This document shows, piece by piece, positions 402 through 50,848 of a stretch of DNA of 64,000 nt (its first letter is position 1; each line of letters opens with the position of its first letter). The position numbers were made by a program, and so were the translations under genes. Location of the stretch: positions 23,436,001 through 23,500,000 of the forward strand of contig NC_043003.1 of assembly GCF_006345805.1 (NCBI RefSeq), written 5' to 3'. The DNA is from Octopus sinensis (Eukaryota). Under the pieces are notes generated by a model that made no database searches, had not been told where the DNA came from, and worked only from the letters and a program-made list of their open reading frames with translations.

Positions 402-874
402 TATACAATCACATGTATGTATATGTATATGGGTGCACAAATGTATATAATGTTTATCGCTTTTTCAATCAACGCCCAATATTTAGATCAAAAGATACTA
501 ATATTTAACTCACATTGCAAACGAAAACTCTACTTTATTACGGAAAATCACGTCATCAATAGAGAAATGAGAAGAAAATTGATTATTTGAAAACGATAAT
601 AGATAATTGCAAAGTTTCAATATCGATAAACAGTTCCATTAAAGACTGGATGACGCAAAACGAAATCTCGTTTGCCTTTGTAGACTTTTATACACATTAG
701 TACAGTTAAGAAAACAACACACACCCACTCAGAAACATATATATACACATACACACACATGCACAGACATATATATATATACACAGTGATACACGCTTAT
801 ATATACACATTGATACACATAAGCATTAGCACACACATATACACACAATATATGCATCACAGATGTATAAACAT

Positions 875-929
<55 letters not shown>

Positions 930-939
930 TTATTTATAC

Positions 940-961
<22 letters not shown>
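1..961. repeat. Compound microsatellites (CT)n, (TA)n, (TG)n, (CA)n with short unique AT-rich stretches
   Basis: Direct inspection; ORFs here are YI/CV dipeptide runs. Confidence 0.9.
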
Positions 962-972
<11 letters not shown>

Positions 973-1449
973 GAGGGCATTATACATCCATGCCAGATGG
1001 CATTATACATACATGCCACACGCTAAGAGGGACATTTAGTCATTTCTACCAAAAATATTACTAATCCCACCGAATGCAATTTTTCAAAGTAAGACATTTA
1101 AAAAATATAGACCTGTATCACAGTGATTTCATACTTACTATTCATCAGCAGGCCTGGATGTATCATACATAAATGACCCTGCCTCGCTTAAGCCGATCAG
1201 CTAACTGATCAACATCAACGAAGCACATGGGTGAGTTTACATATATTACATCCTGTAAATGTCGGACTTTTACGAATTGCATTTCGGGAAAGGAAAAGTT
1301 TTTTCGGAATAAAAATTTAGCAATTAAGGACAACTACTTAATAAGGAAAACTTAACAAGAAATTGTCAGGTAGATAGCGTGAAAACCTCATAAGAGAAAA
1401 AATTTCGAAAATAATTATTTCTTATTGAACATATTAATTTATATATAGA
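962..1449 (-). mobile_element. Inverted copy (one full ~475-bp unit plus ~10 bp) of the hammerhead-containing repeat
   Basis: Reverse complement of the downstream unit; begins and ends at the tctatatataa phase; joins the direct array through a 2-nt GA microhomology at 1448-1449. Confidence 0.93.
1109..1155 (-). ncRNA. Type I hammerhead ribozyme, inverted copy (1-nt deletion in stem II)
   Basis: Minus strand reads AGGCCTG CTGATGA ATA GTAA GTAT GAAA TCACTGTGA TA CAGGTCT. Confidence 0.7.
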
Positions 1450-1659
1450 CAATTTCTTGTTAAGTTTTCCTTATTAAGTAGTTGTCCTTAATTGCTAAAT
1501 TTTTATTCCGAAAAAACTTTTCCTTTCCCGAAATGCAATTCGTAAAAGTCCGACATTTACAGGATGTAATATATGTAAACTCACCCATGTGCTTCGTTGA
1601 TGTTGATCAGTTAGCTGATCGGCTTAAGCGAGGCAGGGTCGTATATGTATGATACATCC

Positions 1660-1707
1660 AGGCCTGCTGATGAATATGTAAGTATGAAATCACTGTGATA
1701 CAGGTCT
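1660..1707 (+). ncRNA. Type I hammerhead ribozyme, unit 1 (predicted cleavage after 1700)
   Basis: AGGCCTG CTGATGA ATAT GTAA GTAT GAAA TCACTGTGA TA CAGGTCT; stem II has a U-G wobble in this copy. Confidence 0.85.
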
Positions 1708-2135
1708 ATATTTTTTAAATGTCTTACTTTGAAAAATTGCATTCGGTGGGATTAGTAATATTTTTGGTAGAAATGACTAAATGTCCCTTTTAGCGTGTGG
1801 CATGTATGTATAATGCCATCTGGCATGGATGTATAATGCCCTCTATATATAAATTAATATGTTCAATAAGAAATAATTATTTTCGAAATTTTTTCTCTTA
1901 TGAAGTTTTCACGCTATCTACCTGACAATTTCTTGTTAAGTTTTCCTTATTAAATAGTTGTCCTTAATTGCTAAATTTTTATTCCGAAAAAACTTTTCCT
2001 TTCCCGAAATGCAATTCGTAAAAGTCCGACATTTACAGGATGTAATATATGTAAACTCACCCATGTACTTCGTTGATGTTGATCAGTTAGCTGATCGGCT
2101 TAAGCGAGGCAGGGTCGTATATGTATGATACATCC

Positions 2136-2183
2136 AGGCCTGCTGATGAATACGTAAGTATGAAATCACTGTGATACAGGTCT
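2136..2183 (+). ncRNA. Type I hammerhead ribozyme, unit 2 (cleavage after 2176)
   Basis: AGGCCTG CTGATGA ATAC GTAA GTAT GAAA TCACTGTGA TA CAGGTCT: full CUGANGA/GAAA/NUH core, 7-bp stem I, 4-bp stem II with GNRA loop, palindromic stem III. Confidence 0.9.
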
Positions 2184-2610
2184 ATATTTTTTAAATGTCT
2201 TACTTTGAAAAATTGCATTCGGTGGGATTAGTAATATTTTTGGTAGAAATGACTAAATGTCCCTCTTAGCGTGTGGCATGTATGTATAATGCCATCTGGC
2301 ATGGATGTATAATGCCCTCTATATATAAATTAATATGTTCAATAAGAAATATTATTTTCGAAATTTTTTCTCTTATGAGGTTTTCACGCTATCTACCTGA
2401 CAATTTCTTGTTAAGTTTTCCTTATTAAGTAGTTGTCCTTAATTGCTAAATTTTTATTCCGAAAAAACTTTTCCTTTCCCGAAATGCAATTCGTAAAAGT
2501 CCGACATTTACAGGATGTAATATATGTAAACTCACCCATGTGCTTCGTTGATGTTGATCAGTTAGCTGATCGGCTTAAGCGAGGCAGGGTCGTTTATGTA
2601 TGATACATCC

Positions 2611-2658
2611 AGGCCTGCTGATGAATACGTAAGTATGAAATCACTGTGATACAGGTCT
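2611..2658 (+). ncRNA. Type I hammerhead ribozyme, unit 3 (cleavage after 2651)
   Basis: Identical to unit 2 motif. Confidence 0.9.
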
Positions 2659-3089
2659 ATATTTTTTAAATGTCTTACTTTTTGAAAAATTGCATTCGGT
2701 GGGATTAGTAATATTTTTGGTAGAAATGACTAAATGTCCCTCTTAGCGTGTGGCATGTATGTATAATGCCATCTGGCATGGATGTATAATGCCCTCTATA
2801 TATAATTAATATGTTCAATAAGAAATAATTATTTTCGAAATTTTTTCTCTTATGAGGTTTTCACGCTATCTACCTGACAATTTCTTGTTAAGTTTTCCTT
2901 ATTAAGTAGTTGTCCTTAATTGCTAAATTTTTATTCCGAAAAAACTTTTCCTTTCCCGAAATGCAATTCGTAAAAGTCCGACATTTACAGGATGTAATAT
3001 ATGTAAACTCACCCATGTGCTTCGTTGTTGTGTTGATCAGTTAGCTGATCGGCTTAAGCGAGGCAGGGTCGTTTATGTATGATACATCC

Positions 3090-3137
3090 AGGCCTGCTGA
3101 TGAATACGTAAGTATGAAATCACTGTGATACAGGTCT
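3090..3137 (+). ncRNA. Type I hammerhead ribozyme, unit 4 (cleavage after 3130)
   Basis: Identical to unit 2 motif. Confidence 0.9.
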
Positions 3138-3560
3138 ATATTTTTTAAATGTCTTACTTTGAAAATTGCATTCGGTGGGATTAGTAATATTTTTGGTAGA
3201 ATGACTAAATGTCCCTCTTAGCGTGTGGCATGTATGTATAATGCCATCTGGCATGGATGTATAATGCCCTCTATATATAAATTAATATGTTCAATAAGAA
3301 ATAATTATTTTCGAAATTTTTCTCTTATGAGGTTTTCACGCTATCTACCTGACAATTTCTTGTTAAGTTTTCCTTATTAAGTAGTTGTCCTTAATTGCTA
3401 AATTTTTTCCGAAAAAACCTTTCCTTTCCCGAAATGCAATTCGTAAAAGTCCGACATTTACAGGATGTAATATATGTAAACTCACCCATGTGCTTCGTTG
3501 ATGTTGATCAGTTAGCTGATCGGCTTAAGCGAGGCAGGGTCGTATATGTATGATACATCC

Positions 3561-3608
3561 AGGCCTGCTGATGAATACGTAAGTATGAAATCACTGTGAT
3601 ACAGGTCT
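3561..3608 (+). ncRNA. Type I hammerhead ribozyme, unit 5 (cleavage after 3601)
   Basis: Identical to unit 2 motif. Confidence 0.9.
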
Positions 3609-4033
3609 ATATTTTTTAAATGTCTTACTTTGAAAAATTGCATTCGGTGGGATTAGTAATATTTTTGGTAGAAATGACTAAATGTCCCTCTTAGCGTGTG
3701 GCATGTATGTATAATGCCATCTGGCATGGATGTATAATGCCCTCTATATATAAATTAATATGTTCAATAAGAATAATTATTTTCGAAATTTTTTCTCTTA
3801 TGAGGTTTTCACGCTATCTACCTGACAATTTCTTGTTAAGTTTTCCTATTAAGTAGTTGTCCTTAATTGCTAAATTTTTATTCCGAAAAAACTTTTCCTT
3901 CCCGAAATGCAATTCGTAAAAGTCCGACATTTACGGATGATGTATATATGTAAACTCACCCATGTGCTTCGTTGATGTTGATCAGTAGCTGATCGGCTTA
4001 AGCGAGGCAGGGTCGTTTATGTATGATACATCC

Positions 4034-4081
4034 AGGCCTGCTGATGAATACGTAAGTATGAAATCACTGTGATACAGGTCT
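4034..4081 (+). ncRNA. Type I hammerhead ribozyme, unit 6 (cleavage after 4074)
   Basis: Identical to unit 2 motif. Confidence 0.9.
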
Positions 4082-4502
4082 ATATTTTTTAAATGTCTTA
4101 CTTTGAAAAATTGCATTCGGTGGGATTAGTAAATTTTTGGTAGAAATGACTAAATGTCCCTCTTAGCGTGTGGCATGTATGTATAATGCATCTGGCATGG
4201 ATGTATAATGCCCTCTATATATAAATTAATATGTTCAATAAGAAATAATTATTTTCGAAATTTTTCTCTTATGAGGTTTTCACGCTATCTACCTGACAAT
4301 TCTTGTTAAGTTTTCCTTATTAAGTAGTTGTCCTTAATTGCTAATTTTTATTCCGAAAAAACTTTTCCTTTCCGAAATGCAATTCGTAAAAGTCCGACAT
4401 TTACAGGATGTAATATATGTAAACTCACCCATGTGCTTCGTTGATGTTGATCAGTTAGCTGATCGGCTAAGCGAGGCAGGGTCGTTTATGTATGATACAT
4501 CC

Positions 4503-4549
4503 AGGCTGCTGATGAATACGTAAGTATGAAATCACTGTGATACAGGTCT
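4503..4549 (+). ncRNA. Type I hammerhead ribozyme, unit 7 (cleavage after 4542; 1-nt deletion in stem I)
   Basis: AGGCTG instead of AGGCCTG; core intact. Confidence 0.8.
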
Positions 4550-4974
4550 ATATTTTTTAAATGTCTTACTTTGAAAAATTGCATTCGGTGGGATTAGTAA
4601 TATTTTTGGTAGAGAATGACTAAATGTCCCTCTTAGCGTGTGGCATGTATGTATAATGCCATCTGGCATGGATGTATAATGCCCTCTATATATAAATTAA
4701 TATGTTCAATAAGAAATAATTTTTTCGAAATTTTTCTCTTATGAGGTTTTCACGCTATCTACCTGACAATTTCTTGTTAAGTTTTCCTTATTAAGTAGTT
4801 GTCCTTAATTGCTAAATTTTTATTCCGAAAAAACTTTTCCTTTCCCGAAATGCAATTCGTAAAAGTCCGACATTTACAGGATGTATATATGTAAACTCAC
4901 CCATGTGCTTCGTTGATGTTGATCAGTTAGCTGATCGGCTTAAGCGAGGCAGGTCGTTTATGTATGATACATCC

Positions 4975-5022
4975 AGGCCTGCTGATGAATACGTAAGTAT
5001 GAAATCACTGTGATACAGGTCT
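4975..5022 (+). ncRNA. Type I hammerhead ribozyme, unit 8 (cleavage after 5015)
   Basis: Identical to unit 2 motif. Confidence 0.9.
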
Positions 5023-5450
5023 ATATTTTTTAAATGTCTTACTTTGAAAAATTGCATTCGGTGGGATTAGTAATATTTTTGGTAGAAATGACTAAATGTC
5101 CCTCTTAGCGTGTGGCATGTATGTATAATGCCATCTGGCATGGATGTATAATGCCCTCTATATATAAATTAATATGTTCAATAAGAAATAATTATTTTCG
5201 AAATTTTTTCTCTTATGAGGTTTTCACGCTATCTACCTGACAATTTCTTGTTAAGTTTTCCTTATTAAGTAGTTGTCCTTAATTGCTAAATTTTTATTCC
5301 GAAAAAACCTTTCCTTTCCCGAAATGCAATTCGTAAAAGTCCGACATTTACAGGATGTAATATATGTAAACTCACCCATGTGCTTCGTTGATGTTGATCA
5401 GTTAGCTGATCGGCTTAAGCGAGGCAGGGTCGTTTATGTATGATACATCC

Positions 5451-5498
5451 AGGCCTGCTGATGAATACGTAAGTATGAAATCACTGTGATACAGGTCT
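5451..5498 (+). ncRNA. Type I hammerhead ribozyme, unit 9 (cleavage after 5491)
   Basis: Identical to unit 2 motif. Confidence 0.9.
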
Positions 5499-5925
5499 AT
5501 ATTTTTTAAATGTCTTACTTTGAAAAATTGCATTCGGTGGAATAGTAATATTTTTGGTAGAAATGACTAAATGTCCTCTATTAGCGTGTGGCATGTATGT
5601 ATAATGCCATCTGGCATGGATGTATAATGCCCTCTATATATAAATTAATATGTTCAATAAGAAATAATTATTTTCGAAATTTTTCTCTTATGAGGTTTTC
5701 ACGCTATCTACCTGACAATTTCTTGTTAAGTTTTCCTTATTAAGTAGTTGTCCTTAATTGCTAAATTTTTATTCCGAAAAAACTTTTCCTTTCCGAAATG
5801 CAATTCGTAAAAGTCCGACATTTACAGGATGTAAATATGTAAACTCACCCATGTGCTTCGTTGATGTTGATCAGTTAGCTGATCGGCGCTTAAGCGAGGC
5901 AGGGTCGTTTATGTATGATACATCC

Positions 5926-5973
5926 AGGCCTGCTGATGAATACGTAAGTATGAAATCACTGTGATACAGGTCT
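5926..5973 (+). ncRNA. Type I hammerhead ribozyme, unit 10 (cleavage after 5966)
   Basis: Identical to unit 2 motif. Confidence 0.9.
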
Positions 5974-7063
5974 ATATTTTTTAATGTCTTACTTTGAAAA
6001 TTGCATTCGGTGGGATTAGTAATATTTTTGGTAGAAATGACTAAATGTCCTCTTAGCGTGTGGCATGTATGTATAATGCCATCTGGCATGGATGTATAAT
6101 GCCCTCTATATATAAATTAATATGTTCAATAAGAAATAATTATTTTCGAAATTTTTTTCTCTATGAGGGTTTTCACGCTATCTACCTGACAATTTCTTGT
6201 TAAGTTTTCCTTATTAAGTAGTTGTCCTTAATTCCTATATATATATATATATGTAAATAATACATGAATAAATAATATACATATGAATACATATGACTAT
6301 ATATGTGTATATGTATATATATATCTATACATGTGTTAGTATACATACATACATACATATATATATATTTGTTCCAAAGTTTGTATATATATTCACCTTA
6401 TGATATATAAATATTATGGGGAGAATTTTTTTTATGTGTGTATATATCTCTATCTACTATAAATATATATACCTATATATGTATATGTATATATGCACAG
6501 ATGTATGTGTTTATGTATGTATACAATCTAGTACGCATATAACACAACATAAGCTCACACATGTGCATATACTGTAACACATACAGATGCATGTAGGCTT
6601 GACACAGATATAATATCTAACCGTACATACTAAGAGCAGAGCTTCAACTTTATATAGAATAGTGTACTTTATATAGAATAGTGCTATCACTTGCTACTTA
6701 TCTATCTATCTATCTAGCGCTCTATATTCTTTTACCTGAACTCTCTATACATCCTTTGTGTGTCTTTTCACCATTTTATCTCTCGCCCTATCTCTCTCAC
6801 ACTCACTCTATTCCTAAACCTGGATTACTATGCATCTGCTGAAACGTAATATATTTATTATCGCTTTTTGATGATAACTTCTGAAACCATAAACAGTATT
6901 CCCTCTGCTGCGCATAGAGTCGCCACGGTTCAAATTATTTAACTTGGCGTTAATTAGTTATTGACTAATCTCGGAGACATTGCCTTAGGTTCATTACAAC
7001 GAATATGTGCACTAACAGACACATACAATATATAGTCACACTTGTCACACATGTATACATATC

Positions 7064-8699: not shown

Positions 8700-9490
8700 T
8701 TAGAATATGATAGTTTTAGGATAATAGCAAAAGAGACAAGGTCTGCAGATAGTAAGATGAGATGAGAAGCGATAGTGTAAAGTTTATAATTGAGATATCC
8801 AACAGAAGTTAGTATGGCTTTTTCGAGGTTTATCTAAAAGCAGGTAAATGAATTGATAATGTATAAGTTCCTATCATTTGAAAATAGCATCTGAAGGTAA
8901 ATGGTGCGTATATACCACAATATAAGGCACCGAGATGGCAGAATCGTTAGCATGCCGGGCGAAATGCTTAGCAGTATTTCGTCTGCCGCTACGTTCTGTG
9001 TTCAAATTCCGCCGAGGTCGACTTTGCCTTTCATCCTTTCGGGGTCGATTAAATAAGTACCAGTTACGCACTGGGGTCGATATAATCGACTTAATCCGTT
9101 TGTCTGTCTTGTTTGTCCTTTCTGTGTTTAGCCCCTTGTGGGTAGTAAAGAAATAGGTGCGTATATACCACAGTCACTCATAACACAAATAAGGTAAGCA
9201 GTGTTCTATACCAGATGAGGTGCCTTGAAAGAAAATGTGCTAAATTCTGAAGCTTACGTGCAAGATACTACCTATTGTATTAACAGACATTTCAGAGAAT
9301 ACAGGAGAGGCTATACTGGAAAGAATGCTGCTTCCATTCTTCATCACCGCACACAAGATGAAACATTTGCTTCCGTTGACGTACTGATTGATACATATCA
9401 CTCTGATACGGAGTATAGACCAATACCTGAATCAGTTTTGAATAGGAGAAAACGAATCAAGTTGCAGCGAATTAGAGTTCGACTATGAAT
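8700..9490 (+). pseudogene. Decayed Penelope-like element with GIY-YIG endonuclease remnant, interrupted by a SINE
   Basis: 9190-9488 reads, across frameshifts, VLYQMRC..KC..YVQDTTYCINRHFREYRRG..SILHH..FASVDVL..YRPIPES, matching the PLE GIY-YIG pattern. Left boundary approximate. Confidence 0.5.
8924..9155 (+). mobile_element. tRNA-derived SINE (family A) with 17-bp target-site duplication
   Basis: Head GGCACCGAGATGGCAGAATCGTTAGC, B-box GTTCAAATTCC, core GCCTTTCATCCTTTCGGGGTCGAT; GGTGCGTATATACCACA at 8903-8919 and 9156-9172. Confidence 0.9.
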
Positions 9491-13964: not shown

Positions 13965-14488
13965 ATTGCAAATGTTGGCACAAGGCCAGCAATTTGGAGT
14001 GCTCAACTGGTATTTATTTCATCGACACCGAAAGGATGAAAGGCAAAGTCAACCGCGGCGGAATTTTAAATTCATAACGTGATGACGGGCGAAATACCTA
14101 TTTGTTTACTACCCACAAAGGGCTAAACACAGAGGGGACAAACAAAGACAGACAAACGGATTAAGTCGATTATATCGACCGCAGTGCGTAACTGGTACTT
14201 AATTTATCGACCCATGAAGGATGAAAGGCAAAGTGGACCTCAGTAGAATTTGAACTCAGAACGTAGCGGCAGACGAAATACCTATTTCTTTACTACCCAC
14301 AAGGAGCTAAACACAGAGAGGATAAACAGGACAGACAAATGGATTAAGTCGATTATATCTACCCAGTGCGTAACTGGTACTTATTTAATCAACCCCGAAA
14401 GGATGAAAGGCAAAGTCGACCTCGGCGGAATTTGAACTCAGAACGTAACGGCAGACGAAATACCGCTAAGCATTTCGCTCGGAATGTT
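13965..14488 (-). mobile_element. Family A SINE with three tandem ~183-bp body modules
   Basis: Module boundary GAAATACC at 14091, 14275 and 14457; head CTAAGCATTTCGC at ~14465-14488. Confidence 0.85.
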
Positions 14489-16489: not shown

Positions 16490-18693
16490 ATGCGAACGAA
16501 TTTCAGTCTGGAGTTTGATGAGCTGCAAAGAATATCGAACCATATAGGAATGAACTGGATGTCAATATTGTCATAAATTTATTCCATCAGTGGTTTTAAA
16601 TGATGTTACTATAATGTGGCTTGGAAAAGAAGTGGTCTATTATTGCAGTGGTTTTGTCTGTGTGTGTGTGTGTCTGTGTGTGGTGAAGAATGTGGCGGAT
16701 GGTAGAGACTTCATCAATATCTTATCTTTTAATGATGGCCTGTTGTGAAAGATAATTGGTTAGTGATAAATAAGCCATTGGTATTGATCATTATTTCAGT
16801 TGTGTGGGAGGAGATTACGTTTAGCAAAGCCAGTGAAAATGCGTGCAGGTCATGAGCATAAAGAGTTTGACCTTTCAGAATCTATTGTTTGATAGGTCGT
16901 GAATAATTAATTAATGTTCAGTGTGGCAGTTAGCTGTTACCAGTAGTAATGACAGGTGCGTAATGGGATTGACCTTTTAAAATCAGTTGCTGGTATTCTA
17001 GAGTAAAAAAACACAACAGCTAAATATACATTTTTGCATTACACTGACGTTGAGCAGCTGAAATTTCACGTTATCTATCATCGTATGAGAGGTTCATTTA
17101 AATATGTACATTTTCATGCGAGCACATAGAAACTCAAGATATATCGTTAAGTAAGCAAATTTACTTAGTAAGAACGTTTAATTTTATTTTTCGTTTTATT
17201 TATATTTTCGTGTTATGTGTCCCCACATGTGTTTGTATTGTCTCCTTTATGTTGGTCCCTTGTGGGCAATAAAGAAAGGAAATTAACTTAGTAGGAATTA
17301 GATTTAGACATCTGAGGATGTATGATAATGTGAACAGATGGTAGACAAAGCAAGACTTTTTCTTTTAATGAATAATCAATGATTAATAGGCCATCTTTGT
17401 TATTTAATTAATCCGGCATCATTATATATTAAATTAAAAGAACACACATTTTCAGAGCTTACCGGGGATATTCACGTTTAGCGCTGTATATTAAACCAAA
17501 GAAAATTGTATTTTATATTTATTTTATGTCTAAAAAAACATACATCAATATTTGACTTCAGTCAGTCTCTTGGAGATAATACACCAGATATATTATGAAC
17601 TACAATTCTAAGTTATATTTCATATCATCAATTGCAGCTCCTGCATCTCAAAATTACTTGTCATCTTAAACTAAAAATAAATGTCGCGTAACCGAAGACT
17701 AAAATTTCAAATTAATATTCTGACGATACATACATAAGACGAAACTCCCACTAAAAGTTTTCACGTTTAAGGAGTAGCAGCAGTTTGAACCTCTTAATGA
17801 TACACTCCATCACAATCCAGAATACATTAAATGCTGATATTTTTTCATACTCGCAAGCTAACCGCTCCATGTTGATCGTGGTATGTTTTGAAACATTATT
17901 CTGCGACTTCTCCGACGAATTGTGAAAACGTTAACTTCCATAAATGAGCCATATAGACATGTTATGATTATACGACTTCATATTACTTCCATTTGCACGT
18001 ATATTATTTTCATTCTTTCTTTTAAATAAATCTACTTCCACTCTGGGATTTGATTTATTACCTTATTAGCAATATCAAAATTACCACTACCGTATCTGTT
18101 ATCTCGTATTACTGTAACAGCAAATCAGTAGCTGATATTGCTATGCACTTAGGAATTTCGATCAGAACCACATGAAACCGATATCGAAACGACTGGGGCA
18201 TTGGATTGAAAGAATAATTACAGCGTTGGGCAAAAGGCCTTACGGTATTTATACAGATACTTTAGATTCTGGGTTTATATTTCATCGAGTCGAGTTTTGT
18301 CTTTCGGATTACAGACTCCCCTAACACTCACCTCCCAAAATCCGACCTTGGGTTATTGTACCGTTGACTTCCAACTCTGTCGTGTCCCAGTTTACGTCTC
18401 TTTCTTTAAATTAATCCATTTATTTAACAAATATTGTTTATAATTATTTTTAAATTATTAGTTGTGAAGTGGATAATGAACATTTGTGGAAACTAAAAGG
18501 TATCTGCTTCAAATCCCTTTTCCTACGGGACTTTTGTTTAAATTGCTTAAAGATAATTATGTGTTACTAGGACACCAATGAAAAATATCAGTGAATAAGA
18601 TATTTAAGAATTTTTGTAGCAATATATTATTCCGCAGTTATATAATTCAACACCATTATTAATCAGATATATATATGGTCCACAGTTTCTTCC

Positions 18694-19742
18694 CTAACAC
18701 CACCTTCCAACTTGGTTCGTTCCCCTGTTCCCGCTCACGCTGCAGCATTTGCTCCTACCTCTCAAATCCAACTACACAGGCATCCATCGTCGTTCCTATC
18801 ACATCACCAACTCCCTTACTTGCACTTTTAGCAACGTCATTTACTGCATTTCCTACTCATTCTGCCCTTCTCTATACATCTGTCACATGGGACGCCGCTT
18901 GACTGATCGGTTCGCTGTGCACCTCCGAGACATCGGCAATGACACCCCAACCACGCGCCATATCCTTTCTACCGGTCATTCACTACAACACCTGTCTGTG
19001 TTCGGATTGTCTTTGCACAGGGGCCATCCGGACTCCTGCCTTTGCCGTGAACAGGAATTATTCTTCTTTCTCCGCTCCTTTGTACTGCATGAGCTCAACA
19101 CCCCTCCTCTCTTCGTCTGACACCCTCCTCTCCTATCTTCATCTGACACCTACTTCATCTCTTCACTCCTACCCACCTTCTCTCTTCAATTATACCCTCT
19201 CCAACCACACTACACCTACATATATCCCACTCTATCACCACCTCACACCACACTCCTACACCCTACTTCACACTGCAACACCTCTACTTCCACATTGCCA
19301 CACCACACACAAGTGCACCACAGCACACCACCTCACACCACTCCTCACGCACAAGCACTGACCAAGTTCCAGCACCATACATCATCACCTGCACACCCAT
19401 ACATCATTATCCGCATCCACCCCCACCCCGCATTCTCACATACACACACACAAGGCACGTGCATCTTAGTTTTGGAATCATCATGGTTTTGGAATCTTTC
19501 TCTCTCTACTGTTAAACTTTTTTCCCCAAACAGCCGCCATGCCTCAACGATAAATCAACAGGATTTTTAAAAAATTCTCTCTCAGTTTATTTTCTCTTAT
19601 TCATTTCTGTTGAAGAGCACAGGCTTGAAACGTAAAAGACTTACTCACTTTCCCGACTTTCTCACTTTCCCAAACTAATAAACCTACTTGTTGTTCATAC
19701 AACTGTCTTCGTCTTTTGGTTGTCTGTAAATTTCAACTATAT
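18694..19742 (+). mobile_element. Penelope-like element 3' part: GIY-YIG endonuclease pseudogene, C/A-rich 3' region and terminus with hammerhead-like motif
   Basis: GSFPCSRSRCSIC / frameshift / TCTFSNVIYCISYSFCPSLYICHMGRRLTDRFAVHLRDI..H..STGHSLQHLSVFGL..REQEL..LN (18700-19120); CTGTTGAAGAGCACAGGCTTGAAACGTA at 19607-19634; abuts (TA)n. Confidence 0.9.
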
Positions 19743-21264: not shown

Positions 21265-21630
21265 CGGTGAGAGGTATACACGGTTACATCAACCCCAGTA
21301 TTCAACTAGTATTTATTTTATCGACCACGTAAGGATGAAAGGCAAAGTCGGCCTCGGTCGAATTTGAACTCAGAGCGTAAAGACGAACAAAATGGCGCTA
21401 ATCATTTTGCCCGTCAGAAGCATTGCCGCTTTGGACACAGTACATACCGACATTTATTCCACCACTTTACGTTTTGGGTTCAAGTTCCGATTCCGATTTT
21501 GCCTTTTATCTATTTTTATCTATTTCGGGGTCAATAAAAAAGTGGCATTTGAGCAATGGATCAATGTCAGCAACATCAACAGTCTCGTCGGACTTGATAA
21601 TCCTGTGCCAAAGATTAGAAACTATTCTTA
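21265..21630. mobile_element. Two degenerate family A SINE fragments (minus then plus)
   Basis: GGATGAAAGGCAAAGTCGGCCTCGG..AATTTGAACTCAGA and TTTCGGGGTCAATAAAA blocks. Confidence 0.65.
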
Positions 21631-23889: not shown

Positions 23890-24465
23890 GTTGTTTCAGT
23901 CATTGGACTGTGGTATATGCTGGAGCACCGCCTTTTAGTCGAAGAAATCGACTTATTTTTTGTAAGCCCGGTGCTTATTCTATCGGTCTCTACTGACGAA
24001 CCGGTTGTCATGCGATGGTTGTGGGGCATAGAGATACAAAAACACATATGAATACACACACACAGACACACACACACATATATATATATGACGAGCTTCT
24101 TTCAGTTTCTTTTTTCTTATTTCTTTACTGCTCACAAGGGGCTAAACTTAGAGGGGACTTACAAGGACACACAAAGGGATTAAGTCGATTACATCGACAC
24201 CAGTGCGTCACTGGTACTTAATTTATCGACCCCGAAGGGATGAAAGGCAAAGTTGACCTAGACGAAATTTGAACTCAGAACGTAATGACAGAGGAAATAC
24301 CGCTAAGCATTTCGCCCAGTGTGCTAACGTTTCTGCCAGCTCACCGCTTTCTTTCAGTTTCTGTCTAACAAATCCACTCACAAGGTTTGCCTAAGGTGCC
24401 ACGCAGCGGGACTGAACCTGGAATCATGTGTTTGGGACGCAAGCTTCTTACCATACAGCCACGCA
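23890..24465 (-). mobile_element. tRNA-derived CORE-like SINE (family B) interrupted by a family A SINE
   Basis: Minus-strand head GGCTGTATGGTAAGAAGCTTGC..GGTTCAGTCCCGCTGCGTGGCACCTTAGGC; body homologous to 39440-39848. Confidence 0.8.
24111..24348 (-). mobile_element. Family A SINE nested in the family B SINE, with 14-bp TSD
   Basis: TTCTTTCAGTTTCT at 24097-24110 and 24349-24362; head GCGGTGAGCTGGCAGAAACGTTAGCAC on minus. Confidence 0.9.
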
Positions 24466-25147: not shown

Positions 25148-25369
25148 CATGCATATATTGGTAGAGGACATCAAAAACACGTTGAACAAAATGAGAAAGG
25201 AAAACATAAAATCAAAAACATACAAAAACACAAAAACATACACCAACCACGAATATGTAAATATGCATGTGTGTGTGTGTGTGTGTGTGAATATGAGTGC
25301 GTGCGTTTGTGTATGTGTTTGTATGCACGTGTGTGGGTGTTCATGTATTTGTGTACATATACGTTTGCG

Positions 25370-25426
<57 letters not shown>
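24945..25426. repeat. (TA)n/(CA)n/(TG)n microsatellite field
   Basis: Direct inspection. Confidence 0.85.
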
Positions 25427-25430
<4 letters not shown>

Positions 25431-25880
25431 TTATGGGTGGCTTGTCTGGTATTCTTTGAAGGAATCTATCCAGACTCTGTTTGAAGTTGATGGGATCCTT
25501 TTCCTCTTTGATCTCCCTCGGGACAATGTTAAATAGGGCAGGGCCTGTTGAGGAAAAGAAATTATGTTGCAGTGTACATGTATGTTGTGATCTTGAATTT
25601 GGCAGGGGACGTATAGCCCGTGGTCCAAGTCTCGGATGAACCTTGAAGCTAATGTTTAGGTCGTTTGGGCAAAGTTGGCGGTATATTTTCCACATCGTAC
25701 AAATGATGTACCGCTCACGGCGACGCTGGAGGGAGTAAAGTTTCAAGGCTTTAAGGCGATCCCAATAGTCGAGAGCAGCCATGCCTTCAATTTGTTTAGT
25801 GAGAGCCCTCTGGGGTGACTCAATTCTGGAGATGTTTTGTCTTGTGTGAGGAGACCACAGTGGGCAGCAGTATTCAATAT
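25427..25880 (-). mobile_element. CR1/L2-group LINE, ORF2 C-terminal fragment
   Basis: IEYCCPLWSPHTRQNISRIESPQRALTKQIEGMAALDYWDRLKALKLYSLQRRRERY...[28 protein letters not shown]. Confidence 0.88.
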
Positions 25881-26499
25881 ATATACATAACTCTATTAAT
25901 CGCTAACAAATTTCAGTAAGTCTGGTTGTGCTACCATGGTATGTGGTCACTGAATGCTTAGTCCATCATATGGACCCAAGTTGTTGCTTCAATATGATAC
26001 ATAATTCATCGATTTGCATGGATAGAAATGCTAAATTGCAGTATAAGAAATAAAGAACACACAACTATTACAAAACACTGACATATCACTACATAGATAT
26101 CATTGTACATACGATAGTGTCCTGTATTGTTTCTTGTTATTAAATTATTACTAAAATACCATTATAAGGTATCAGTAAATCTCAAATATATATCGTGTCT
26201 ACAATTATATTATAGGGGAATTGGTGAGATGTCTACATGGTTAGCCGTTAGTTTGAAATGTTTTTTTTCTGTGTTTTTAAGATTTTTAGCTTGCATAGAC
26301 TAGTTCAGTTTTTCAGCTCAGTATTTGGTCTATTGTGGTTATGGTTTTAGCGAAGTTCAAAGCAGCTAAAAGAATAGGTTTTGTTATTGACGTGTAATAA
26401 TCCCCTAAGCGAAACCATTTAGCATGAATATACTCTTTCAGAGAGAACCATATCAAAGTAACAACAAATCCTGCCAAAAACTTTACTGACGCATCCTTC

Positions 26500-26830
26500 C
26501 ACATCTTCGCATTTAGGGCCCAAAGTCGACTTCGGCGGAATTTGAACTCAGAGCGTAAAGACGGAGAAATACTGCTAAGTTTCGTCTGGCGTTTTAACGA
26601 TTCCTACAACATGCCGACTTACAGTTTATTAACATGGATTTTAAATTGAAGCACAAGGCCAGCAATTTCGAGAAATTGGGTAAGTCGATTACATCGACCC
26701 CAGAGCTCAACTTTTATGGAAAGAATAGCGGACAAAATCAACCTAGGCGGAAACTGATCTCAGAACGTAAAGATGGACGAAATGTCACTAAACATGTTGC
26801 CCGGTGCGGTAACGATTCTGCTGGATCACT
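26500..26830 (-). mobile_element. Two degenerate family A SINE fragments
   Basis: AAAGTCGACTTCGGCGGAATTTGAACTCAGA and AAGTCGATTACATCGACCCC blocks. Confidence 0.7.
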
Positions 26831-35677: not shown

Positions 35678-36062
35678 GGTAGGCACAGGGGTGGCTGTGT
35701 GGTAAGAAGCTTGCTTCCCAACTAGGTCGTCTCAGGTTCAGTCCAACTTCGAGGCAACTTGGACAAGTGTCTTCTATAGCATAGGGCCGATCAAAGTCTT
35801 GTGATTGGATTTGGTAGACGGAAAATGAAAGCAGCCCGTCGTGTATATATATATATATATATATATTGCGGGGTGAGTGGGTGAAACTTTGTGTCTCTGT
35901 TTGTCCCCCCATTACCACTTGACAACCAGTGTTGGCGTGTTTACGTCCCCGTAACCTAGTGGTTCGGCAAAAGTATTCGATAGAATTAGTACTAGGCTTA
36001 AAGAAAAAAATAAGTCGTAGGATCAATTTAAATGACTGATTCAAGTAAAAGAATAAAGAATA
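35678..36062 (+). mobile_element. Family B (CORE-like) SINE
   Basis: GGTGGCTGTGTGGTAAGAAGCTTGC..GGTTCAGTCC..CTTGGACAAGTGTCTTCTA; internal (TA)n as in other copies. Confidence 0.85.
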
Positions 36063-36247
36063 AAGTTTATTGGCCCCTTTTTTTAAATTTAGCATATATT
36101 ATAATACTACCCCACTTTATGCACACCTCACCCCTACACCTCCACTACGCCCCACACCTACCCCATCCTACATTCACATCCCAAACTCCACATCCGCACC
36201 CATCCATACCTACCCCTACATCCCTAAACCAACGCACACCACACAAG

Positions 36248-36904
36248 GTGACAGGTGATGAGAAATGTATTATCTATCGAAATGTTCAGAGAAACCGATC
36301 CTGGAGTGAGCGACATGAGCCACACTTAGCCACCCTAAAAGCGGGTCTTCACCCTAAAAAAGTCTTGCTTTGTGTCTTGTGGGATTGGAAAGGAATTCTG
36401 TGCTATGAGCTTCTCCCAAGTAACCAGACAATTAATTCTGAGAAATACTGCATACAACTGGACAAGTTAAAAGCAGTAATTCAAGAGAAATGACCAGAAT
36501 TGGCCAACAGAGAGGGTGTTGTTCTCTAATACGATAATGCAAGACCGTACATTTCTTTGGGAACCAGACAAAAATTGCTGCAGCTCGGCTGGGATGTGTT
36601 ACCCCACCCTCCATATTCACCAGATATTGCTCCTTCGGATTTCCACTTATTCAGGTCTCTGCAGAATAGTTATAATGGTAAAAATTTCAATTCCTTGGAT
36701 GACATAAAAAAATACCTTGATGAATTCTTTGCCATGAAACCACCTCAATTCTGGGAAGGTGGTATTTTCAAGTTAAAAGAAAGATGGAGACGCATTGTGC
36801 AAGAAAATGGTTCATATTAGTTTGATTAAAAATGTAATGGCAAGTATTTATGGACCTTTTTCTTTCCTTTAAAAATCAGCACGAACTTTCCAGACAACCC
36901 AATA
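36248..36904 (+). mobile_element. Mariner transposon, 5'-truncated (transposase DD34D region pseudogene plus right TIR)
   Basis: VTGDEK..LHPKKVLLCVLWDWKGIL..TINSEKYC.QL..*..DNARP..LPHPPYSPDIAPSDFHLFRSLQN; internal stops; ends CACGAACTTTCCAGACAACCCAATA followed by TA. Confidence 0.95.
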
Positions 36905-37677: not shown

Positions 37678-38032
37678 AAAGGCGGCGAGCCGGCAGAAAC
37701 ATTAGTACGCCGGGCGAAATGCGTAGCCGTATTTCGTCTGCTGCTACGTTCTGAGTTCATATATGTACCAGTTACGCACTGGAGTCGATATAATCGACTT
37801 AATCTGTTTGTCTGTCCCTGTTTGTCTCTTCTATGTTTAGCCCCTTGTGGGTAGTAAAGAAATAGGTATTTCGTCTGTCTTTACGTTCCGATTTCAAATT
37901 CCGCCGAGATCGACTTTACCTTTCATTCTTTCGAGGTCGATAAATTACGTACCAGTTGCGTACTGGGGTCGATCTGATCGACTGTCTCCCCTCCCCCAAA
38001 ATATCGGGCCTTGTGCCTAGAGTAGAAAAGAA
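37678..38032 (+). mobile_element. Family A SINE with two body modules
   Basis: Head GGCGGCGAGCCGGCAGAAACATTAGTAC; GTATTTCGTCTG module start at ~37730 and ~37866. Confidence 0.85.
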
Positions 38033-46514: not shown

Positions 46515-46670
46515 ATATTCTTTTCTAATCTAGGTGCAAGGCCTGGAATTTGGGGGGAGTGGGCTAGTCGATTAGATTGACCCCGGTACGCAACTGGTAC
46601 TTAATTTATCGACCCCGAAAGGATGAAGGGCAAAGTAGACCTCGGCAGAATTTGAACTGAGAAGTAAAGT
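46515..46670 (-). mobile_element. 5'-truncated family A SINE
   Basis: AACTGGTACTTAATTTATCGACCCCGAAAGGATGAAGGGCAAAG block. Confidence 0.8.
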
Positions 46671-48814
46671 CAAACGATTTTTTAATGTATATAAAGAAGG
46701 AATATATTTTATTTTGCCTTCTAGCATATCATAAAAGATTGAATTTAGTGGAGGATGTCGAGAATTTCTTTATATTAATATCCGAAGAATGAGCATCACG
46801 AAAAGCTCTTTTACTATTAGTTTCAACAATTGTGTGTAGAATTCCTGGATATTGTTCTTATTATTCAATATCTGCGTTATCTCCGTCAATGCACGTAGTG
46901 GTAATGTTGTTATGCTAAGTTCAGGATCTGGGGTTTTAGTTATATCTCTTCAGATTTTTAAAGCAATCACAGAACATACAATATTTTAGGTATTGATTCT
47001 CTTTTCAGTGTCCTATTTCCAGATTTTTATATATGGATAATTTATAAATTCCTTTTACTGCTACATTATTTCTTCTTGCGGGTTAAAGCTTGAATATCGG
47101 GGACTTTCATTGGCTGACTATCCTTGAAAAACATATCTGATGATATGAACTTCGTGCTCTCATGCATCAGTCGCTGAGACACTTTTCGGGGACATATTTA
47201 CACGACCTAGTTTCATTTTAATGGTATAACATATAGTGTACGAAAAAACTTACCAACTATTGTCATTCTAGAAAATGCATTATTTATTATGGGTGATCAG
47301 AAATATTATGGTAAAAATTCTTCTAAAAAATTCACTAAAATATGAAAAGCATTCTAATTCATTACACGCTTTTATGGCTTCATAGTTTCTGATGAGATGG
47401 TCTGCCTTCAGTTTCAGTGAGGACTTCTCTGCTCCTCACCCAGTGTTGCCATTTTTCTTTACAGATATGTACATACAACTCATTATTGTTGTCAAACATG
47501 TCCATTTACGTACCTTTGCTGCCAACACAACAACATGGCATCGGAAAACTTTTTCATAAATTCAATTATTGTTTTTGCTTTCTACTCAAAAGAGCTTGTC
47601 AATCCAGTCTCCGCTTTCTATATTTTGGCTTCCTTGGACAGAGAAAAAACATTTTCCCCTGTTTTTGTTTTCTATTTTGTTTTATAGCTATTTGTATGAG
47701 CTTCACTGTTTATTACTAAATATATTTTCGTTCTTCACTTGATACTTTATAATAGATTTCTTGTTGAATGAGAGCCCTACCTGATTCTATTCGTGGTAAA
47801 CATAATGTTTCTATGTCAGATTTTGAGTGATATACACAAAGTGCACTCTTTTGTTGTTGTTTAATATTATATTATTGGAATGTGATTGGGTGGAATATGA
47901 GTTCTATGTAGTGTTATGTTATTGCATGGCAACCGTATGCATTGTGATTTGTTTGAATTATGGTGTCTGGTACGATGTTTTGTAAAAATATGTGTTCTGC
48001 TTTGCTTATTGTAAGTTAAGTTTTCAAATAACTGATTTCTCTTGTAGGTTCCGTTCATATTAGACTATTGAAAACTAGCCATGTATTTCTTGACATTAAA
48101 ACTCGTGTTGAATATTGTGGAACAATCAGCTAGTTGGTATTCGATTAATTTGGATCCGTTGACAGATTCTTTGTAGAACTCTGATACATAACCTTATTCT
48201 TTCGGTGAGTTTCTTCCCAAGCGTTTTTTCTGATTCATATTCATCGATTTTGTTTACTTTCCATTATCGCTATTGCTTCTCTTAGGCTGTCTTTCGTGTT
48301 AACCCTAGCTTATATGATCTGGTGTGATTAGAGATTATATTTCGTGTCCTGTTAAGTGTGCTGTCAGGGAATCATTTTGTTGTGGCTGTTATTTGATTGG
48401 TTGTTCTCATAAGAAATTTTGAATTCTATTCATATATTTCTTTGCATCAGTTTTCCATTTCTCATACTAATTACTTGCGTATGAGCTCTGCCCTATTTTC
48501 AATGAATTCGCGTTTATTGTCTGTGTCGTCTTTTCTGTTGTATCTACATTCTTTGTGCAGTATTTTGTATTTGTGGATTCTGTTGTGATAGCTTTCATTA
48601 GCTTACGGTAATATTATGTTTGTATCAACTATCAGTGTTGTAATATTTTCATGAATTAAGACGTCATTTTTTACAGACGTTCATTTCCATTTCACTTTTT
48701 CGTCGTAAAGTCGTATGTAGTTAGTACATAATAGGGTCTGTTTTTATATTTTCATTGTTTAGTATGCAGTCTTGACCAAAGGTTTGGTACATTTTTTAAA
48801 AAGAAGTAAAACTA

Positions 48815-50745: not shown

Positions 50746-50848
50746 CTCTACAGATCACATAAAAAGGCATAGACAAGCTAAAAATTCAAAACCGGCTTGA
50801 AATGAATGGGAGTTAAATGGTGGGTTAAATAACATGCATTACAATAGA

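What the first reader, a model, noticed from the sequence alone, without database searches (positions are those of the whole stretch)
1450..6233. Ten-copy tandem array in which every ~475-bp unit encodes a complete type I hammerhead ribozyme (candidate cephalopod retrozyme / circRNA source)
Seen: each unit has AGGCCTG-CTGATGA-ATAC-GTAA-GTAT-GAAA-TCACTGTGA-TA-CAGGTCT. That is stem I (7 bp, one G-U), the CUGANGA core, a 4-bp stem II with a GNRA loop and R-Y closing pair, GAAA, a near-palindromic stem III (ATCACTGTGAT) and an AUA triplet. Predicted cuts follow 1700, 2176, 2651, 3130, 3601, 4074, 4542, 5015, 5491 and 5966, giving nine monomers of 468-479 nt. The unit has no credible ORF. Established: tandem genomic repeats with type I hammerheads in animals (non-LTR retrozymes; newt satellite 2, Schistosoma Sm-alpha) are processed into linear and circular RNAs, reported mostly at ~170-400 nt. 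Inference: this looks like satellite DNA but is probably a young retrozyme family with an unusually long monomer. I do not recognise it, but cannot confirm it is undescribed.
Basis: partly seen in the sequence, partly recalled or inferred. Interest (0 to 1): 0.95.

Follow-up and report, generated by a model that had tools for sequence, protein, structure and literature searches.

The report
Tandem hammerhead-ribozyme repeat (retrozyme-type element)
A very young 476-bp non-coding repeat, present as ten head-to-tail copies plus one overlooked inverted copy, carries a hammerhead self-cleaving RNA motif in every unit and looks like a new family of the known animal "retrozymes".

Summary
A 475/476-bp unit is repeated 10.1 times at 1448-6246.

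Chance is unlikely: a loose descriptor hits 1 of 20,000 shuffled units, and nothing as good appears in 47 Mb of shuffled background.

Caveats:
- Rfam's hammerhead models do not score the motif, even at E<=10.
- The usually conserved G10.1-C11.1 pair is A-U.
- Helix III is unstable alone and palindromic, so cleavage probably needs two copies (a double hammerhead).

It sits head-to-head with the array, and TA-rich microsatellite flanks both outer ends. Published Penelope-like element (PLE) insertions show the same pattern.

Best reading: a young, non-autonomous, PLE-dependent non-LTR retrozyme insertion, made from a circular or multimeric RNA. The plus-strand RNA is strongly self-paired (z = -8.7).

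A 476-nt monomer is not unusually long for the class. The cephalopod origin could not be checked. Cleavage, expression and circularity are untested.

Verdict: new member of a known kind, moderate interest.

The parts
873..955 (.). Left flank: (AT)n/(TG)n microsatellite next to the 3' end of the inverted unit; presumed target DNA.
   Evidence: TRF row 873-972, period 2; sequence read.
956..1449 (-). Inverted full unit (consensus positions 142-476 followed by 1-160). Its 3' end faces the left flank and its 5' end meets the direct array head-to-head.
   Evidence: BLAST of the consensus: 142-476 maps to 1449-1116 (99.4%) and 1-160 maps to 1115-956 (98.8%); alignment.
1109..1155 (-). Hammerhead motif of the inverted unit. 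It has a 1-nt deletion in helix II (3 bp left). The predicted cut lies between + coordinates 1116 and 1115.
   Evidence: Descriptor hit with helices 7/3/4 bp; cut position; model R1 13.2 bits.
1447..1449 (.). Head-to-head junction of the two 5' ends (consensus 142 reverse-complemented against consensus 224), with a 2-nt overlap. It is not a mirror-image foldback.
   Evidence: BLAST coordinates; sequence.
1448..6246 (+). Direct tandem array: 10.1 units of a 476-bp consensus. It starts at consensus 224 and ends near consensus 282.
   Evidence: TRF; BLAST of the consensus, 98.1-99.8% identity per unit; alignment.
1660..1707 (+). Hammerhead motif 1 (C10.4->U, giving a U.G pair); cut after 1700.
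2136..2183 (+). Hammerhead motif 2 (exact); cut after 2176.
2611..2658 (+). Hammerhead motif 3 (exact); cut after 2651.
3090..3137 (+). Hammerhead motif 4 (exact); cut after 3130.
3561..3608 (+). Hammerhead motif 5 (exact); cut after 3601.
4034..4081 (+). Hammerhead motif 6 (exact); cut after 4074.
4502..4549 (+). Hammerhead motif 7, with a 1-nt deletion in a CC run of the helix I 5' strand. It fails the descriptor. The deletion could be an assembly error. Cut after 4542.
   Evidence: model R1 12.1 bits.
4975..5022 (+). Hammerhead motif 8 (exact); cut after 5015.
5451..5498 (+). Hammerhead motif 9 (exact); cut after 5491.
5926..5973 (+). Hammerhead motif 10 (exact); cut after 5966.
6247..6368 (.). 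Right flank: (TA)n-rich microsatellite next to the 3' end of the direct array; presumed target DNA.
   Evidence: TRF row 6236-6368, period 2; sequence.

Best explanation
The locus 956-6246 is one young insertion of a non-coding, non-autonomous retroelement of the animal 'non-LTR retrozyme' kind, that is, a derivative or parasite of Penelope-like elements (PLEs).

Shown here:
- There are eleven near-identical 476-bp units, ten direct and one inverted at the 5' end.
- Each unit carries a type I hammerhead motif on one strand only: helix I 7 bp, CUGAUGA, helix II 4 bp with a GUAA loop, GAAA, a short palindromic helix III, and an AUA triplet.
- Both outer ends abut TA-rich microsatellite.
- The ribozyme-sense RNA is unusually self-paired.

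Inferred from published work on retrozymes and PLEs:
1. A donor array is transcribed, probably by Pol II. There are no Pol III boxes, the + strand has many T5+ runs, and each unit has a TATA-like box.
2. Hammerheads of neighbouring units pair through their palindromic helix III (AUCACUGUGAU) into double hammerheads. These cut after A17 and release 476-nt monomers with 5'-OH and 2',3'-cyclic phosphate ends.
3. A host RtcB-type ligase or the ribozyme itself circularises the monomers. The single hammerhead is then a poor cutter, because helix III alone is unstable, and this protects the circle.
4. A PLE reverse transcriptase/GIY-YIG endonuclease nicks both strands of AT-rich DNA and primes cDNA internally on the circular or multimeric RNA from both nicks. 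Rolling-circle copying from one nick gives the 10-unit array, and copying from the other gives the single inverted unit. The two 5' ends are then joined at 1447/1448.
For: Motif and chance:
- The motif is present 10 times on + and once on -.
- A loose type I descriptor finds nothing else in 128 kb of window sequence (both strands).
- It finds 3 hits in 47 Mb of dinucleotide shuffles, none as good as the observed motif, and 1 hit in 20,000 shuffled units.
- A covariance model built from the crystallised Schistosoma type I hammerhead (typed from my memory of PDB 2GOZ) ranks the eight exact copies as its top eight hits. They align in register through the core and all three helices (17.2 bits, E about 0.02).

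RNA structure:
- The + strand monomer folds to -146.9 kcal/mol, against -96.2 +/- 5.8 for shuffles (z = -8.7). The - strand gives -112 (z = -5.8).
- The circular form has 65.5% of bases paired, including 18 G.U pairs.
- Helix III alone has dG 0.0. The helix III x helix III duplex has -10.1, and two motifs cofold into a double hammerhead at -31.1 against 2 x -12.1 for two separate motifs. This matches the published architecture of metazoan type I hammerheads that act as dimers (PMC4209133).

Insertion architecture:
- The inverted unit, the head-to-head junction, array ends that do not coincide with the cleavage site, and TA-rich flanks are all seen here.
- Published PLE insertions show partial tandems, an inverted 5'-truncated copy at the 5' end and a (TA)n bias (PMC8557442).
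- A purified PLE protein cleaves and extends both DNA strands at AT-rich sites and starts reverse transcription internally (PMC11167929).

Other:
- Units are 98.1-99.8% identical to the consensus.
- There is no ORF and no ribozyme on the other strand.
- Retrozymes with type I hammerheads are documented in molluscs and many other phyla (PMC7229834).
Against: - Rfam's hammerhead covariance models give no hit at gathering score, nor at E<=10, even on a 121-nt slice.
- The 10.1-11.1 pair is A-U, although G-C is the most conserved pair after 15.1-16.1 (PMC3088659; PMC4209133).
- The nearest-neighbour MFE of the 48-mer is an alternative fold in which U4-U7 pairs with 15.1-15.4 (-12.1, against -9.7 for the hammerhead fold). 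In a 656-nt dimer transcript the double hammerhead lies 5.9 kcal/mol above the MFE.
- In the Schistosoma-model search, unrelated window sequence reaches 15.6 bits, so 17.2 bits is only marginally above noise.
- No canonical loop 1-loop 2 contact is recognisable.
- Only one locus is visible, and no other copy lies in the window. There are no expression data and no confirmed PLE nearby.
- The two 3' ends lie about 120 nt apart in the unit, unlike the fixed internal start sites reported for one PLE.
- No target-site duplication can be defined.
Confidence: 0.62

Rival explanations
1. This is an ordinary minisatellite or satellite that expanded by unequal crossing-over. It happens to contain a hammerhead-like string that is not catalytic or never transcribed.
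For: - Rfam is negative.
- The 10.1-11.1 pair is A-U, helix III is unstable, and an alternative fold is the MFE.
- Short hammerhead consensus matches are expected by chance in large genomes (PMC3088659). The loose-descriptor rate of 0.064 hits per Mb implies hundreds of loose hits in a Gb-sized genome.
- A few variants are shared by non-adjacent units.
Against: - The chance of such a motif in a given 476-nt unit is about 5e-5 for the loose descriptor and much lower at the observed helix lengths.
- The RNA is strongly self-paired on the motif-bearing strand.
- An inverted 5' copy plus TA-rich flanks is a retrotransposition signature, not a slippage signature.
- The palindromic helix III matches the known dimeric design.
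Confidence: 0.15
2. The unit is the pseudo-LTR or terminal region of an autonomous Penelope-like element found elsewhere in the genome. The array is then a solo-pLTR tandem, not an independent retrozyme family.
For: - The hammerhead architecture (short palindromic helix III, no evident loop-loop contact) resembles PLE hammerheads.
- The insertion architecture is PLE-like.
- A 2026 preprint finds retrozyme consensus sequences homologous to PLE pLTRs.
Against: - There is no RT or endonuclease coding sequence in or next to the array.
- Ten complete non-coding units is the retrozyme pattern.
- The unit has no similarity to the PLE-endonuclease-like remnant at 18.7-19.1 kb.
- PLE minimal hammerheads usually have a longer helix II with an extra base after A9. 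That is absent here.
Confidence: 0.15
3. Part of the structure (copy number, the inverted unit, the single-base deletions in motifs 7 and 11) is a long-read assembly artefact.
For: Differences between units are dominated by 1-nt indels in homopolymer runs (36 indel cells against 20 substitution cells out of 4284). That is typical of uncorrected long-read errors.
Against: - The inverted junction is not a mirror-image foldback: consensus 142 meets consensus 224, leaving an 80-nt non-palindromic centre.
- The inverted unit has its own substitutions.
- Its outer end abuts unique flanking sequence.
Confidence: 0.08

Closest known systems
Metazoan non-LTR retrozymes (Cervera & de la Pena 2020, PMC7229834; Li, Clavereau & Pollet 2026 preprint, 10.64898/2026.07.22.740005)
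   Same: - Tandem, AT-rich, non-coding repeats of a few hundred bp, with one type I hammerhead per unit.
- The RNA is highly self-paired.
- Known in molluscs (mussel, 350-390 bp).
- The unit length lies within the published 51-972 bp range.
   Different: - The sequence is unrelated to anything I could retrieve.
- The hammerhead has A10.1-U11.1, a GUAA loop 2 and no recognisable loop 1-loop 2 motif.
- Expression and circularity are untested.
- In the passages of these two papers that my term searches returned, I found no mention of an inverted 5' copy or a TA-repeat target.
Penelope-like element insertions and their pLTR hammerheads (PMC4209133, PMC8557442, PMC11167929)
   Same: - Partial tandems, an inverted 5' copy directly upstream, and AT/(TA)n targets.
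- Internal initiation of reverse transcription and extension of both DNA strands.
- Hammerheads with a short palindromic helix III that act as dimers.
   Different: - There is no RT-GIY-YIG ORF.
- The units are complete and repeated ten times.
- Helix II is 4 bp without the extra base after A9.
- No 30-40-bp 'tail' was identified.
Newt satellite 2 and cave-cricket pDo500 hammerhead satellites
   Same: Tandem ~330-bp-class repeats with type I hammerheads. Their weak helix III favours double-hammerhead cleavage of multimeric transcripts (established knowledge; summarised).
   Different: Those hammerheads keep G10.1-C11.1 and have a 1-2-bp helix III. There is no sequence similarity.
Schistosoma Sm-alpha hammerhead (PDB 2GOZ)
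   Same: Same core and type I topology. It aligns in register to a model built from it.
   Different: - Sm-alpha is a SINE-like element with Pol III promoter boxes (from memory). Here there are no A/B boxes and many T5+ runs.
- Sm-alpha has a stable helix III and a defined loop-bulge tertiary contact.
- Similarity outside the core is low (17 bits).
Plant LTR retrozymes and viroid-like circular RNAs
   Same: Hammerhead-processed, circular, self-paired non-coding RNA as the proposed intermediate.
   Different: Plant retrozymes have type III hammerheads, LTRs, a PBS/PPT and 4-bp target-site duplications. Hammerhead viroid-like RNAs carry ribozymes in both polarities. Here only one strand carries one.

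Membership tests
Hammerhead ribozyme, type I | Conserved core C3 U4 G5 A6 N7 G8 A9 ... G12 A13 A14 | tested here: met
   CUGAUGA and GAA are present in all 11 copies.
Hammerhead ribozyme, type I | A15.1-U16.1 pair and a non-G base at position 17 (NUH triplet) | tested here: met
   A15.1-U16.1 is present and the triplet is A-U-A; the cut falls before C1.1.
Hammerhead ribozyme, type I | Three helices around the core, with helix I open (type I order) | tested here: met
   Helix I is 7 bp (one G.U), helix II is 4 bp plus a GUAA loop, and helix III is 4 bp plus a 3-nt loop. Helix III alone is predicted unstable (dG 0.0), whereas the inter-copy duplex gives -10.1.
Hammerhead ribozyme, type I | G10.1-C11.1 pair at the base of helix II (near-invariant) | tested here: not met
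   Here the pair is A10.1-U11.1, a purine-pyrimidine Watson-Crick pair. The literature calls G-C the most conserved pair after 15.1-16.1, and active U-U variants exist.
Hammerhead ribozyme, type I | Score at or above threshold with Rfam Hammerhead_1 or another model of the hammerhead clan | tested here: not met
   No hammerhead hit at gathering score or at E<=10 on 5.8 kb or on 121 nt. A single-sequence model from the Schistosoma ribozyme gives 17.2 bits, E about 0.02, against noise up to 15.6 bits.
Hammerhead ribozyme, type I | Tertiary contact between loop 2 and a loop or bulge in helix I | tested here: inconclusive
   No canonical motif is seen. Helix I ends in a multiloop with an 8-nt AU-rich strand. 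Docking of the GUAA loop onto the CC:GG step of helix I is only my speculation.
Hammerhead ribozyme, type I | Mg2+-dependent self-cleavage at the predicted site | not testable with these tools
   This needs in vitro transcription.
Non-LTR retrozyme | [quoted passage not shown] | tested here: met
   Copy 7 has a 1-nt deletion.
Non-LTR retrozyme | No coding capacity, low GC content, and no LTR/PBS/PPT | tested here: met
   ORFs are at most 56 aa. GC is 33.6% (base counts). There are no terminal repeats other than the units themselves.
Non-LTR retrozyme | Highly self-paired monomer RNA | tested here: met
   z = -8.7; 65.5% of bases are paired in the circular fold.
Non-LTR retrozyme | Expressed as linear and circular monomer RNAs | not testable with these tools
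   No transcriptome of the source organism is available. Two metagenome scans and the ORF look-ups found nothing.
Non-LTR retrozyme | A dispersed multi-locus family that coexists with PLEs in the genome | tested here: inconclusive
   There is no other copy in the 64-kb window. A PLE-endonuclease-like remnant at 18.66-19.12 kb is recognised only from memory; Pfam and PDB sequence searches are negative.
Penelope-like element insertion signature | Tandem copies, plus an inverted copy directly at the 5' end, plus an AT-rich/(TA)n target | tested here: met
   compared with the descriptions.
Penelope-like element (autonomous) | ORF with a telomerase-like RT and a GIY-YIG endonuclease | tested here: not met
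   There is none in or next to 956-6246, so the element is at most a non-autonomous derivative.
Sm-alpha-type SINE-like hammerhead element | Internal Pol III A and B boxes | tested here: not met
   There is no match even to loose A/B box patterns, and the + strand has several T5+ runs.
Viroid-like RNA with ribozymes in both polarities | A self-cleaving motif on the complementary strand | tested here: not met
   There is no Rfam ribozyme hit on either strand. Within the direct array the descriptor hits only the + strand.

The most novel reading that the evidence does not exclude
This locus is a fresh 'fossil' of a single integration event. A ~476-nt hammerhead-processed circular RNA was copied by rolling-circle reverse transcription from both nicked strands of a TA microsatellite by a Penelope-like element enzyme, giving ten units from one nick and one inverted unit from the other. 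If the same architecture recurs at other loci of the family, it would be the first locus-level structural evidence that PLE machinery integrates animal retrozymes. It would also define a hammerhead variant (A10.1-U11.1, GNRA loop 2) in a lineage where none has been described.
Probability: 0.3. Interest if true: 0.55.

Novelty: new member of a known kind. Interest (0 to 1): 0.4.

Why it matters
Retrozymes are the main source of ribozyme-made circular RNAs in animals, and how they move is still argued from co-occurrence and sequence similarity with Penelope-like elements. This array is nearly undecayed. It preserves both ends, an inverted 5' copy and a TA-repeat target, so it gives a concrete, checkable picture of the integration step.

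The hammerhead also deviates at the most conserved helix II pair and escapes the Rfam models. Families like this are therefore probably under-counted by model-based annotation.

Beyond that it is one more family of a known class. Nothing here changes the current view of hammerhead or retrozyme biology.

Tried and rejected
- **Rfam.** I ran it at gathering score on the whole window, and at E<=10 on 800-6600 and on 2100-2220. There was no hammerhead hit. The sub-threshold mir-297/mir-466-type hits lie in the TA/TG microsatellites and are low-complexity artefacts.
- **Metagenome contigs.** Exact-pattern scans with the hammerhead core-helix II string and with a GC-richer part of the unit found 0 loci.
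- **Unit ORFs.** Looking up ORFs from the unit in the gene-position collection, to find other genomic or transcript copies, found nothing on record.
- **Source organism.**
  - Exact look-ups of the LINE-like and mariner-like ORFs failed.
  - A homology search with the PLE-endonuclease-like fragment gave one unnamed Logan protein from run SRR11869391.
  - The one paper matching the run-number prefix concerns Chinese herbal medicines and did not help.
  - The origin therefore stays unknown.
- **Literature.** Searches for the motif and SINE sequences as text found nothing. Searching 'hammerhead ribozyme' plus 'cephalopod' returned no paper describing such an element.
- **PLE-like fragment.** Pfam and PDB sequence searches of the fragment at 18.66-19.12 kb gave no GIY-YIG match.
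- **Minimal hammerheads elsewhere.** A relaxed core-plus-helix II scan of the window found nothing convincing.
- **Empty-site paralogue.** A search for one among the flanks within the window found none.
- **Pol III A/B boxes.** None found.
- **Foldback artefact for the inverted unit.** Considered and rejected, because the junction is not mirror-symmetric.
- **Selection on the motif.** The hammerhead columns vary less than the rest (1/432 against 55/3852 cells, Fisher p = 0.04). I do not lean on this, because most variation is homopolymer indels, which the motif largely lacks.

Full report

Yes.
- Tandem Repeats Finder reports one array at 1448-6237, with period 475, 10.1 copies and 97% matches.
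Shuffles of the window give none.
- The predicted cut sites (after 1700, 2176, 2651, 3130, 3601, 4074, 4542, 5015, 5491 and 5966) and the nine monomer lengths (468-479 nt) are exactly as stated.
- The longest ORF per unit is 56 aa with a TTG start. Neither of the two unit ORFs looked up is on record in the gene-position collection.

Two details need correcting.
- Copy 1 has C10.4->U, which keeps a U.G pair.
- Copy 7 has a 1-nt deletion in a CC run of the helix I 5' strand.

**2.

Directly upstream of the array lies an eleventh unit in inverted orientation.
- Consensus positions 142-476 map to 1449-1116 and positions 1-160 map to 1115-956, at about 99% identity.
- It carries its own hammerhead motif at 1109-1155 on the minus strand, with a 1-nt deletion in helix II.
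- The direct array starts at consensus position 224 (window 1448) and ends near consensus 282 (window 6246).

So the two 5' ends meet head-to-head at 1447/1448, with a 2-nt overlap. The two 3' ends face outwards into TA-rich microsatellite (873-955 and 6247-6368).

The junction is not mirror-symmetric: consensus 142 meets consensus 224, leaving an 80-nt non-palindromic centre. It is therefore not a simple foldback artefact. No other copy of the unit lies in the window.

**3. Is the motif more than chance?**

I wrote a loose type I descriptor: CUGANGA, GAAA, U16.1, H17, and helices I/II/III of at least 4/3/3 bp.
- On both strands of the window it finds only these copies.
- In 400 dinucleotide-preserving shuffles of the rest of the window (47 Mb scanned) it finds 3 hits, none with the observed 7/4/4-bp helices.
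- Among 20,000 shuffles of the unit, one contains a hit.

A fortuitous motif in this particular repeat is therefore improbable. A Gb-sized genome would still hold hundreds of loose chance hits, as the literature also warns.

**4. Evidence that weakens 'complete hammerhead'**

- Rfam's hammerhead models give no hit at gathering score, nor at E<=10 on 5.8 kb or on a 121-nt slice.
  - The motif departs from the usual consensus at 10.1-11.1 (A-U, not G-C), at 15.2-16.2 (U-A, not C-G) and at 17 (A, not C).
  - I infer, but could not test, that these departures explain the miss.
  - G10.1-C11.1 is described as the most conserved pair after 15.1-16.1.
- A covariance model built from the crystallised Schistosoma type I hammerhead was also run.
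  - The model ranks the eight exact copies first, aligned in register (17.2 bits, E about 0.02).
  - Unrelated sequence reaches 15.6 bits, so this is weak support.
- The nearest-neighbour MFE of the 48-mer is an alternative fold (-12.1 kcal/mol) in which U4-U7 pairs with 15.1-15.4. The hammerhead fold scores -9.7.

**5. Helix III and the dimer design**

- The helix III hairpin alone has a predicted dG of 0.0.
- Its sequence AUCACUGUGAU is palindromic. Two copies form a 10-bp duplex (-10.1), and two motifs cofold into a double hammerhead (-31.1, against -24.2 for two separate motifs).
- In a 656-nt dimer transcript the double hammerhead still lies 5.9 kcal/mol above the MFE. Folding during transcription, or a protein, would have to help.

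This is the published architecture of most metazoan type I hammerheads: helix I about 6 bp, helix II 4 bp, and a short palindromic helix III. Such a hammerhead is inactive as a single motif and active when a second copy is nearby (PMC4209133). In the one purified PLE system studied, the hammerhead needed the PLE protein to cleave.

**6. The RNA as a whole**

- The + strand monomer folds to -146.9 kcal/mol, against -96.2 +/- 5.8 for shuffles (z = -8.7).
- The - strand gives -112 (z = -5.8).
- The circular form has 65.5% of bases paired, with 18 G.U pairs.
- The stronger structure on the ribozyme-bearing strand fits 'highly self-paired' retrozyme circles.
- Only this strand carries a ribozyme motif.
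- There are no Pol III A/B boxes and several T5+ runs on the + strand. Each unit has a TATATAAA box at consensus position 146. Transcription by Pol II is my inference.

**7. Age and data quality**

- Units are 98.1-99.8% identical to the 476-bp consensus.
- Of 4284 aligned cells, 36 differ by indels, mostly in homopolymer runs, and 20 by substitution.
- This pattern looks like long-read assembly error. True divergence is probably below 0.5%, and the deletions in motifs 7 and 11 may not be real.
- The hammerhead columns vary less than the rest (1/432 against 55/3852 cells, p = 0.04). The homopolymer bias confounds this result.

**8. What it is and how it works**

The architecture consists of tandem units, an inverted copy at the 5' end, TA-rich target DNA, and ends that do not coincide with the ribozyme cut site. 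This matches published descriptions of PLE insertions (PMC8557442). It also matches the biochemistry of a purified PLE enzyme, which cleaves and extends both strands of AT-rich DNA and starts reverse transcription internally on the RNA (PMC11167929).

Tandem non-coding repeats with one type I hammerhead per unit are the definition of animal non-LTR retrozymes.
- They are known in mussels and many other phyla (PMC7229834).
- They are now argued to be PLE derivatives (2026 preprint).

My best explanation (confidence about 0.6) is a young retrozyme-type insertion, in these steps:
1. Multimeric transcripts are cut by double hammerheads into 476-nt monomers.
2. The monomers are circularised.
3. A PLE enzyme copies a circular or multimeric RNA from both nicked strands of a TA repeat.
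4. Rolling-circle copying gives ten units on one side, and the second primer gives one inverted unit.

The anatomy is shown here. Cleavage, circularisation, transcription and the identity of the enzyme are inferred.

One point is unexplained. The two 3' ends lie about 120 nt apart in the unit. Both lie in AT-rich stretches, which could reflect microhomology with the TA primer.

**9. Rivals**

- A satellite with a fortuitous, inert motif (about 0.15).
- A solo-pLTR array of an autonomous PLE (about 0.15; the mechanism would be the same).
- Partial assembly artefact (about 0.08).

**10. Comparison with what is known, and novelty**

- The 476-nt monomer is not unusual. Published ranges are 150-450 bp and consensus lengths of 51-972 bp.
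- I found no paper in the held library describing hammerheads or retrozymes in cephalopods, and no text match to the sequence. Dfam, Repbase and the source genome could not be searched.
- I could not confirm that the window comes from a cephalopod. The window is clearly metazoan-like: it is AT-rich and full of microsatellites, and it holds a SINE-like repeat with 15 BLAST hits (at least 12 copies), a mariner remnant and LINE-like remnants.
- The retrozyme papers do not mention an inverted 5' copy or a TA-repeat target in the passages my term searches returned. That is the one modestly new point, and it rests on a single locus.

**Verdict:** new member of a known kind; interest 0.4.

Noticed in passing
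window 13998-14464 (2.5 tandem copies); also about 8974-9158, 21304-21387, 24202-24301, 26521-26783, 37729-37964, 46586-46677, 53812-53904, 63243-63597: A SINE-like repeat of about 120-180 bp (core ...GTCGACCTCGGCGGAATTTGAACTCAGAAC...) gives 15 BLAST hits in the 64 kb, corresponding to at least 12 copies on both strands at 72-100% identity. No tRNA or other Rfam family reached threshold.
   Followed up: partly
window 36032-36817 (+): Remnant of a mariner-type DNA transposase. Pfam Transposase_1 matches 36032-36490 at E = 7e-21. The next ORF fragment, 36530-36817, looks like the C-terminal DDD part of the transposase but gave no Pfam match.
   Followed up: partly
window 18663-19117 (+): A frameshifted ORF fragment that I recognise from memory as resembling the Zn-finger linker plus GIY-YIG endonuclease end of a Penelope-like element (…CSRSRCSIC…, …NVIYCIS…LYI…RL.DR…H…). 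Pfam and PDB sequence searches do not confirm it. One 58%-identical unnamed protein exists in a Logan assembly (P0001, SRR11869391). No hammerhead lies downstream, and the fragment has no similarity to the 476-bp unit.
   Followed up: partly
window 25174-25902 (-) and 50397-50747 (-): ORF fragments that look like C-terminal tails of LINE/RTE-type reverse transcriptases (recognised from memory). Pfam found nothing.
   Followed up: partly
window 1448-6246: Differences between repeat units are mostly single-base indels in A/T/C homopolymer runs. This suggests residual long-read assembly errors, so copy-specific 'mutations', including those in hammerhead motifs 7 and 11, should not be over-read.
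   Followed up: yes
window 1846-1853 and the same position in each unit (consensus 146-153): A TATA-box-like TATATAAA sits about 330 nt upstream of the next cleavage site on the ribozyme strand. The inverted unit's 5' end (consensus 142) falls just before it. The match could be chance in AT-rich DNA.
   Followed up: no
window 1798-1844 and the same position in each unit: Each unit holds an internal 23-bp direct repeat (TGGCATGGATGTATAATGCCATC, 2 copies). Each copy forms a GGCAT/ATGCC hairpin in the predicted fold.
   Followed up: no
window 48857-49175: A separate 88-bp tandem repeat with 3.6 copies at 83% identity. It is unrelated to the hammerhead unit.
   Followed up: no
window 904-974 and 6288-6577: Sub-threshold Rfam matches to mir-297, mir-466 and mir-1277 (at most 41 bits, against gathering scores of 81-90). 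They lie entirely in TA/TG microsatellite and are low-complexity artefacts.
   Followed up: yes
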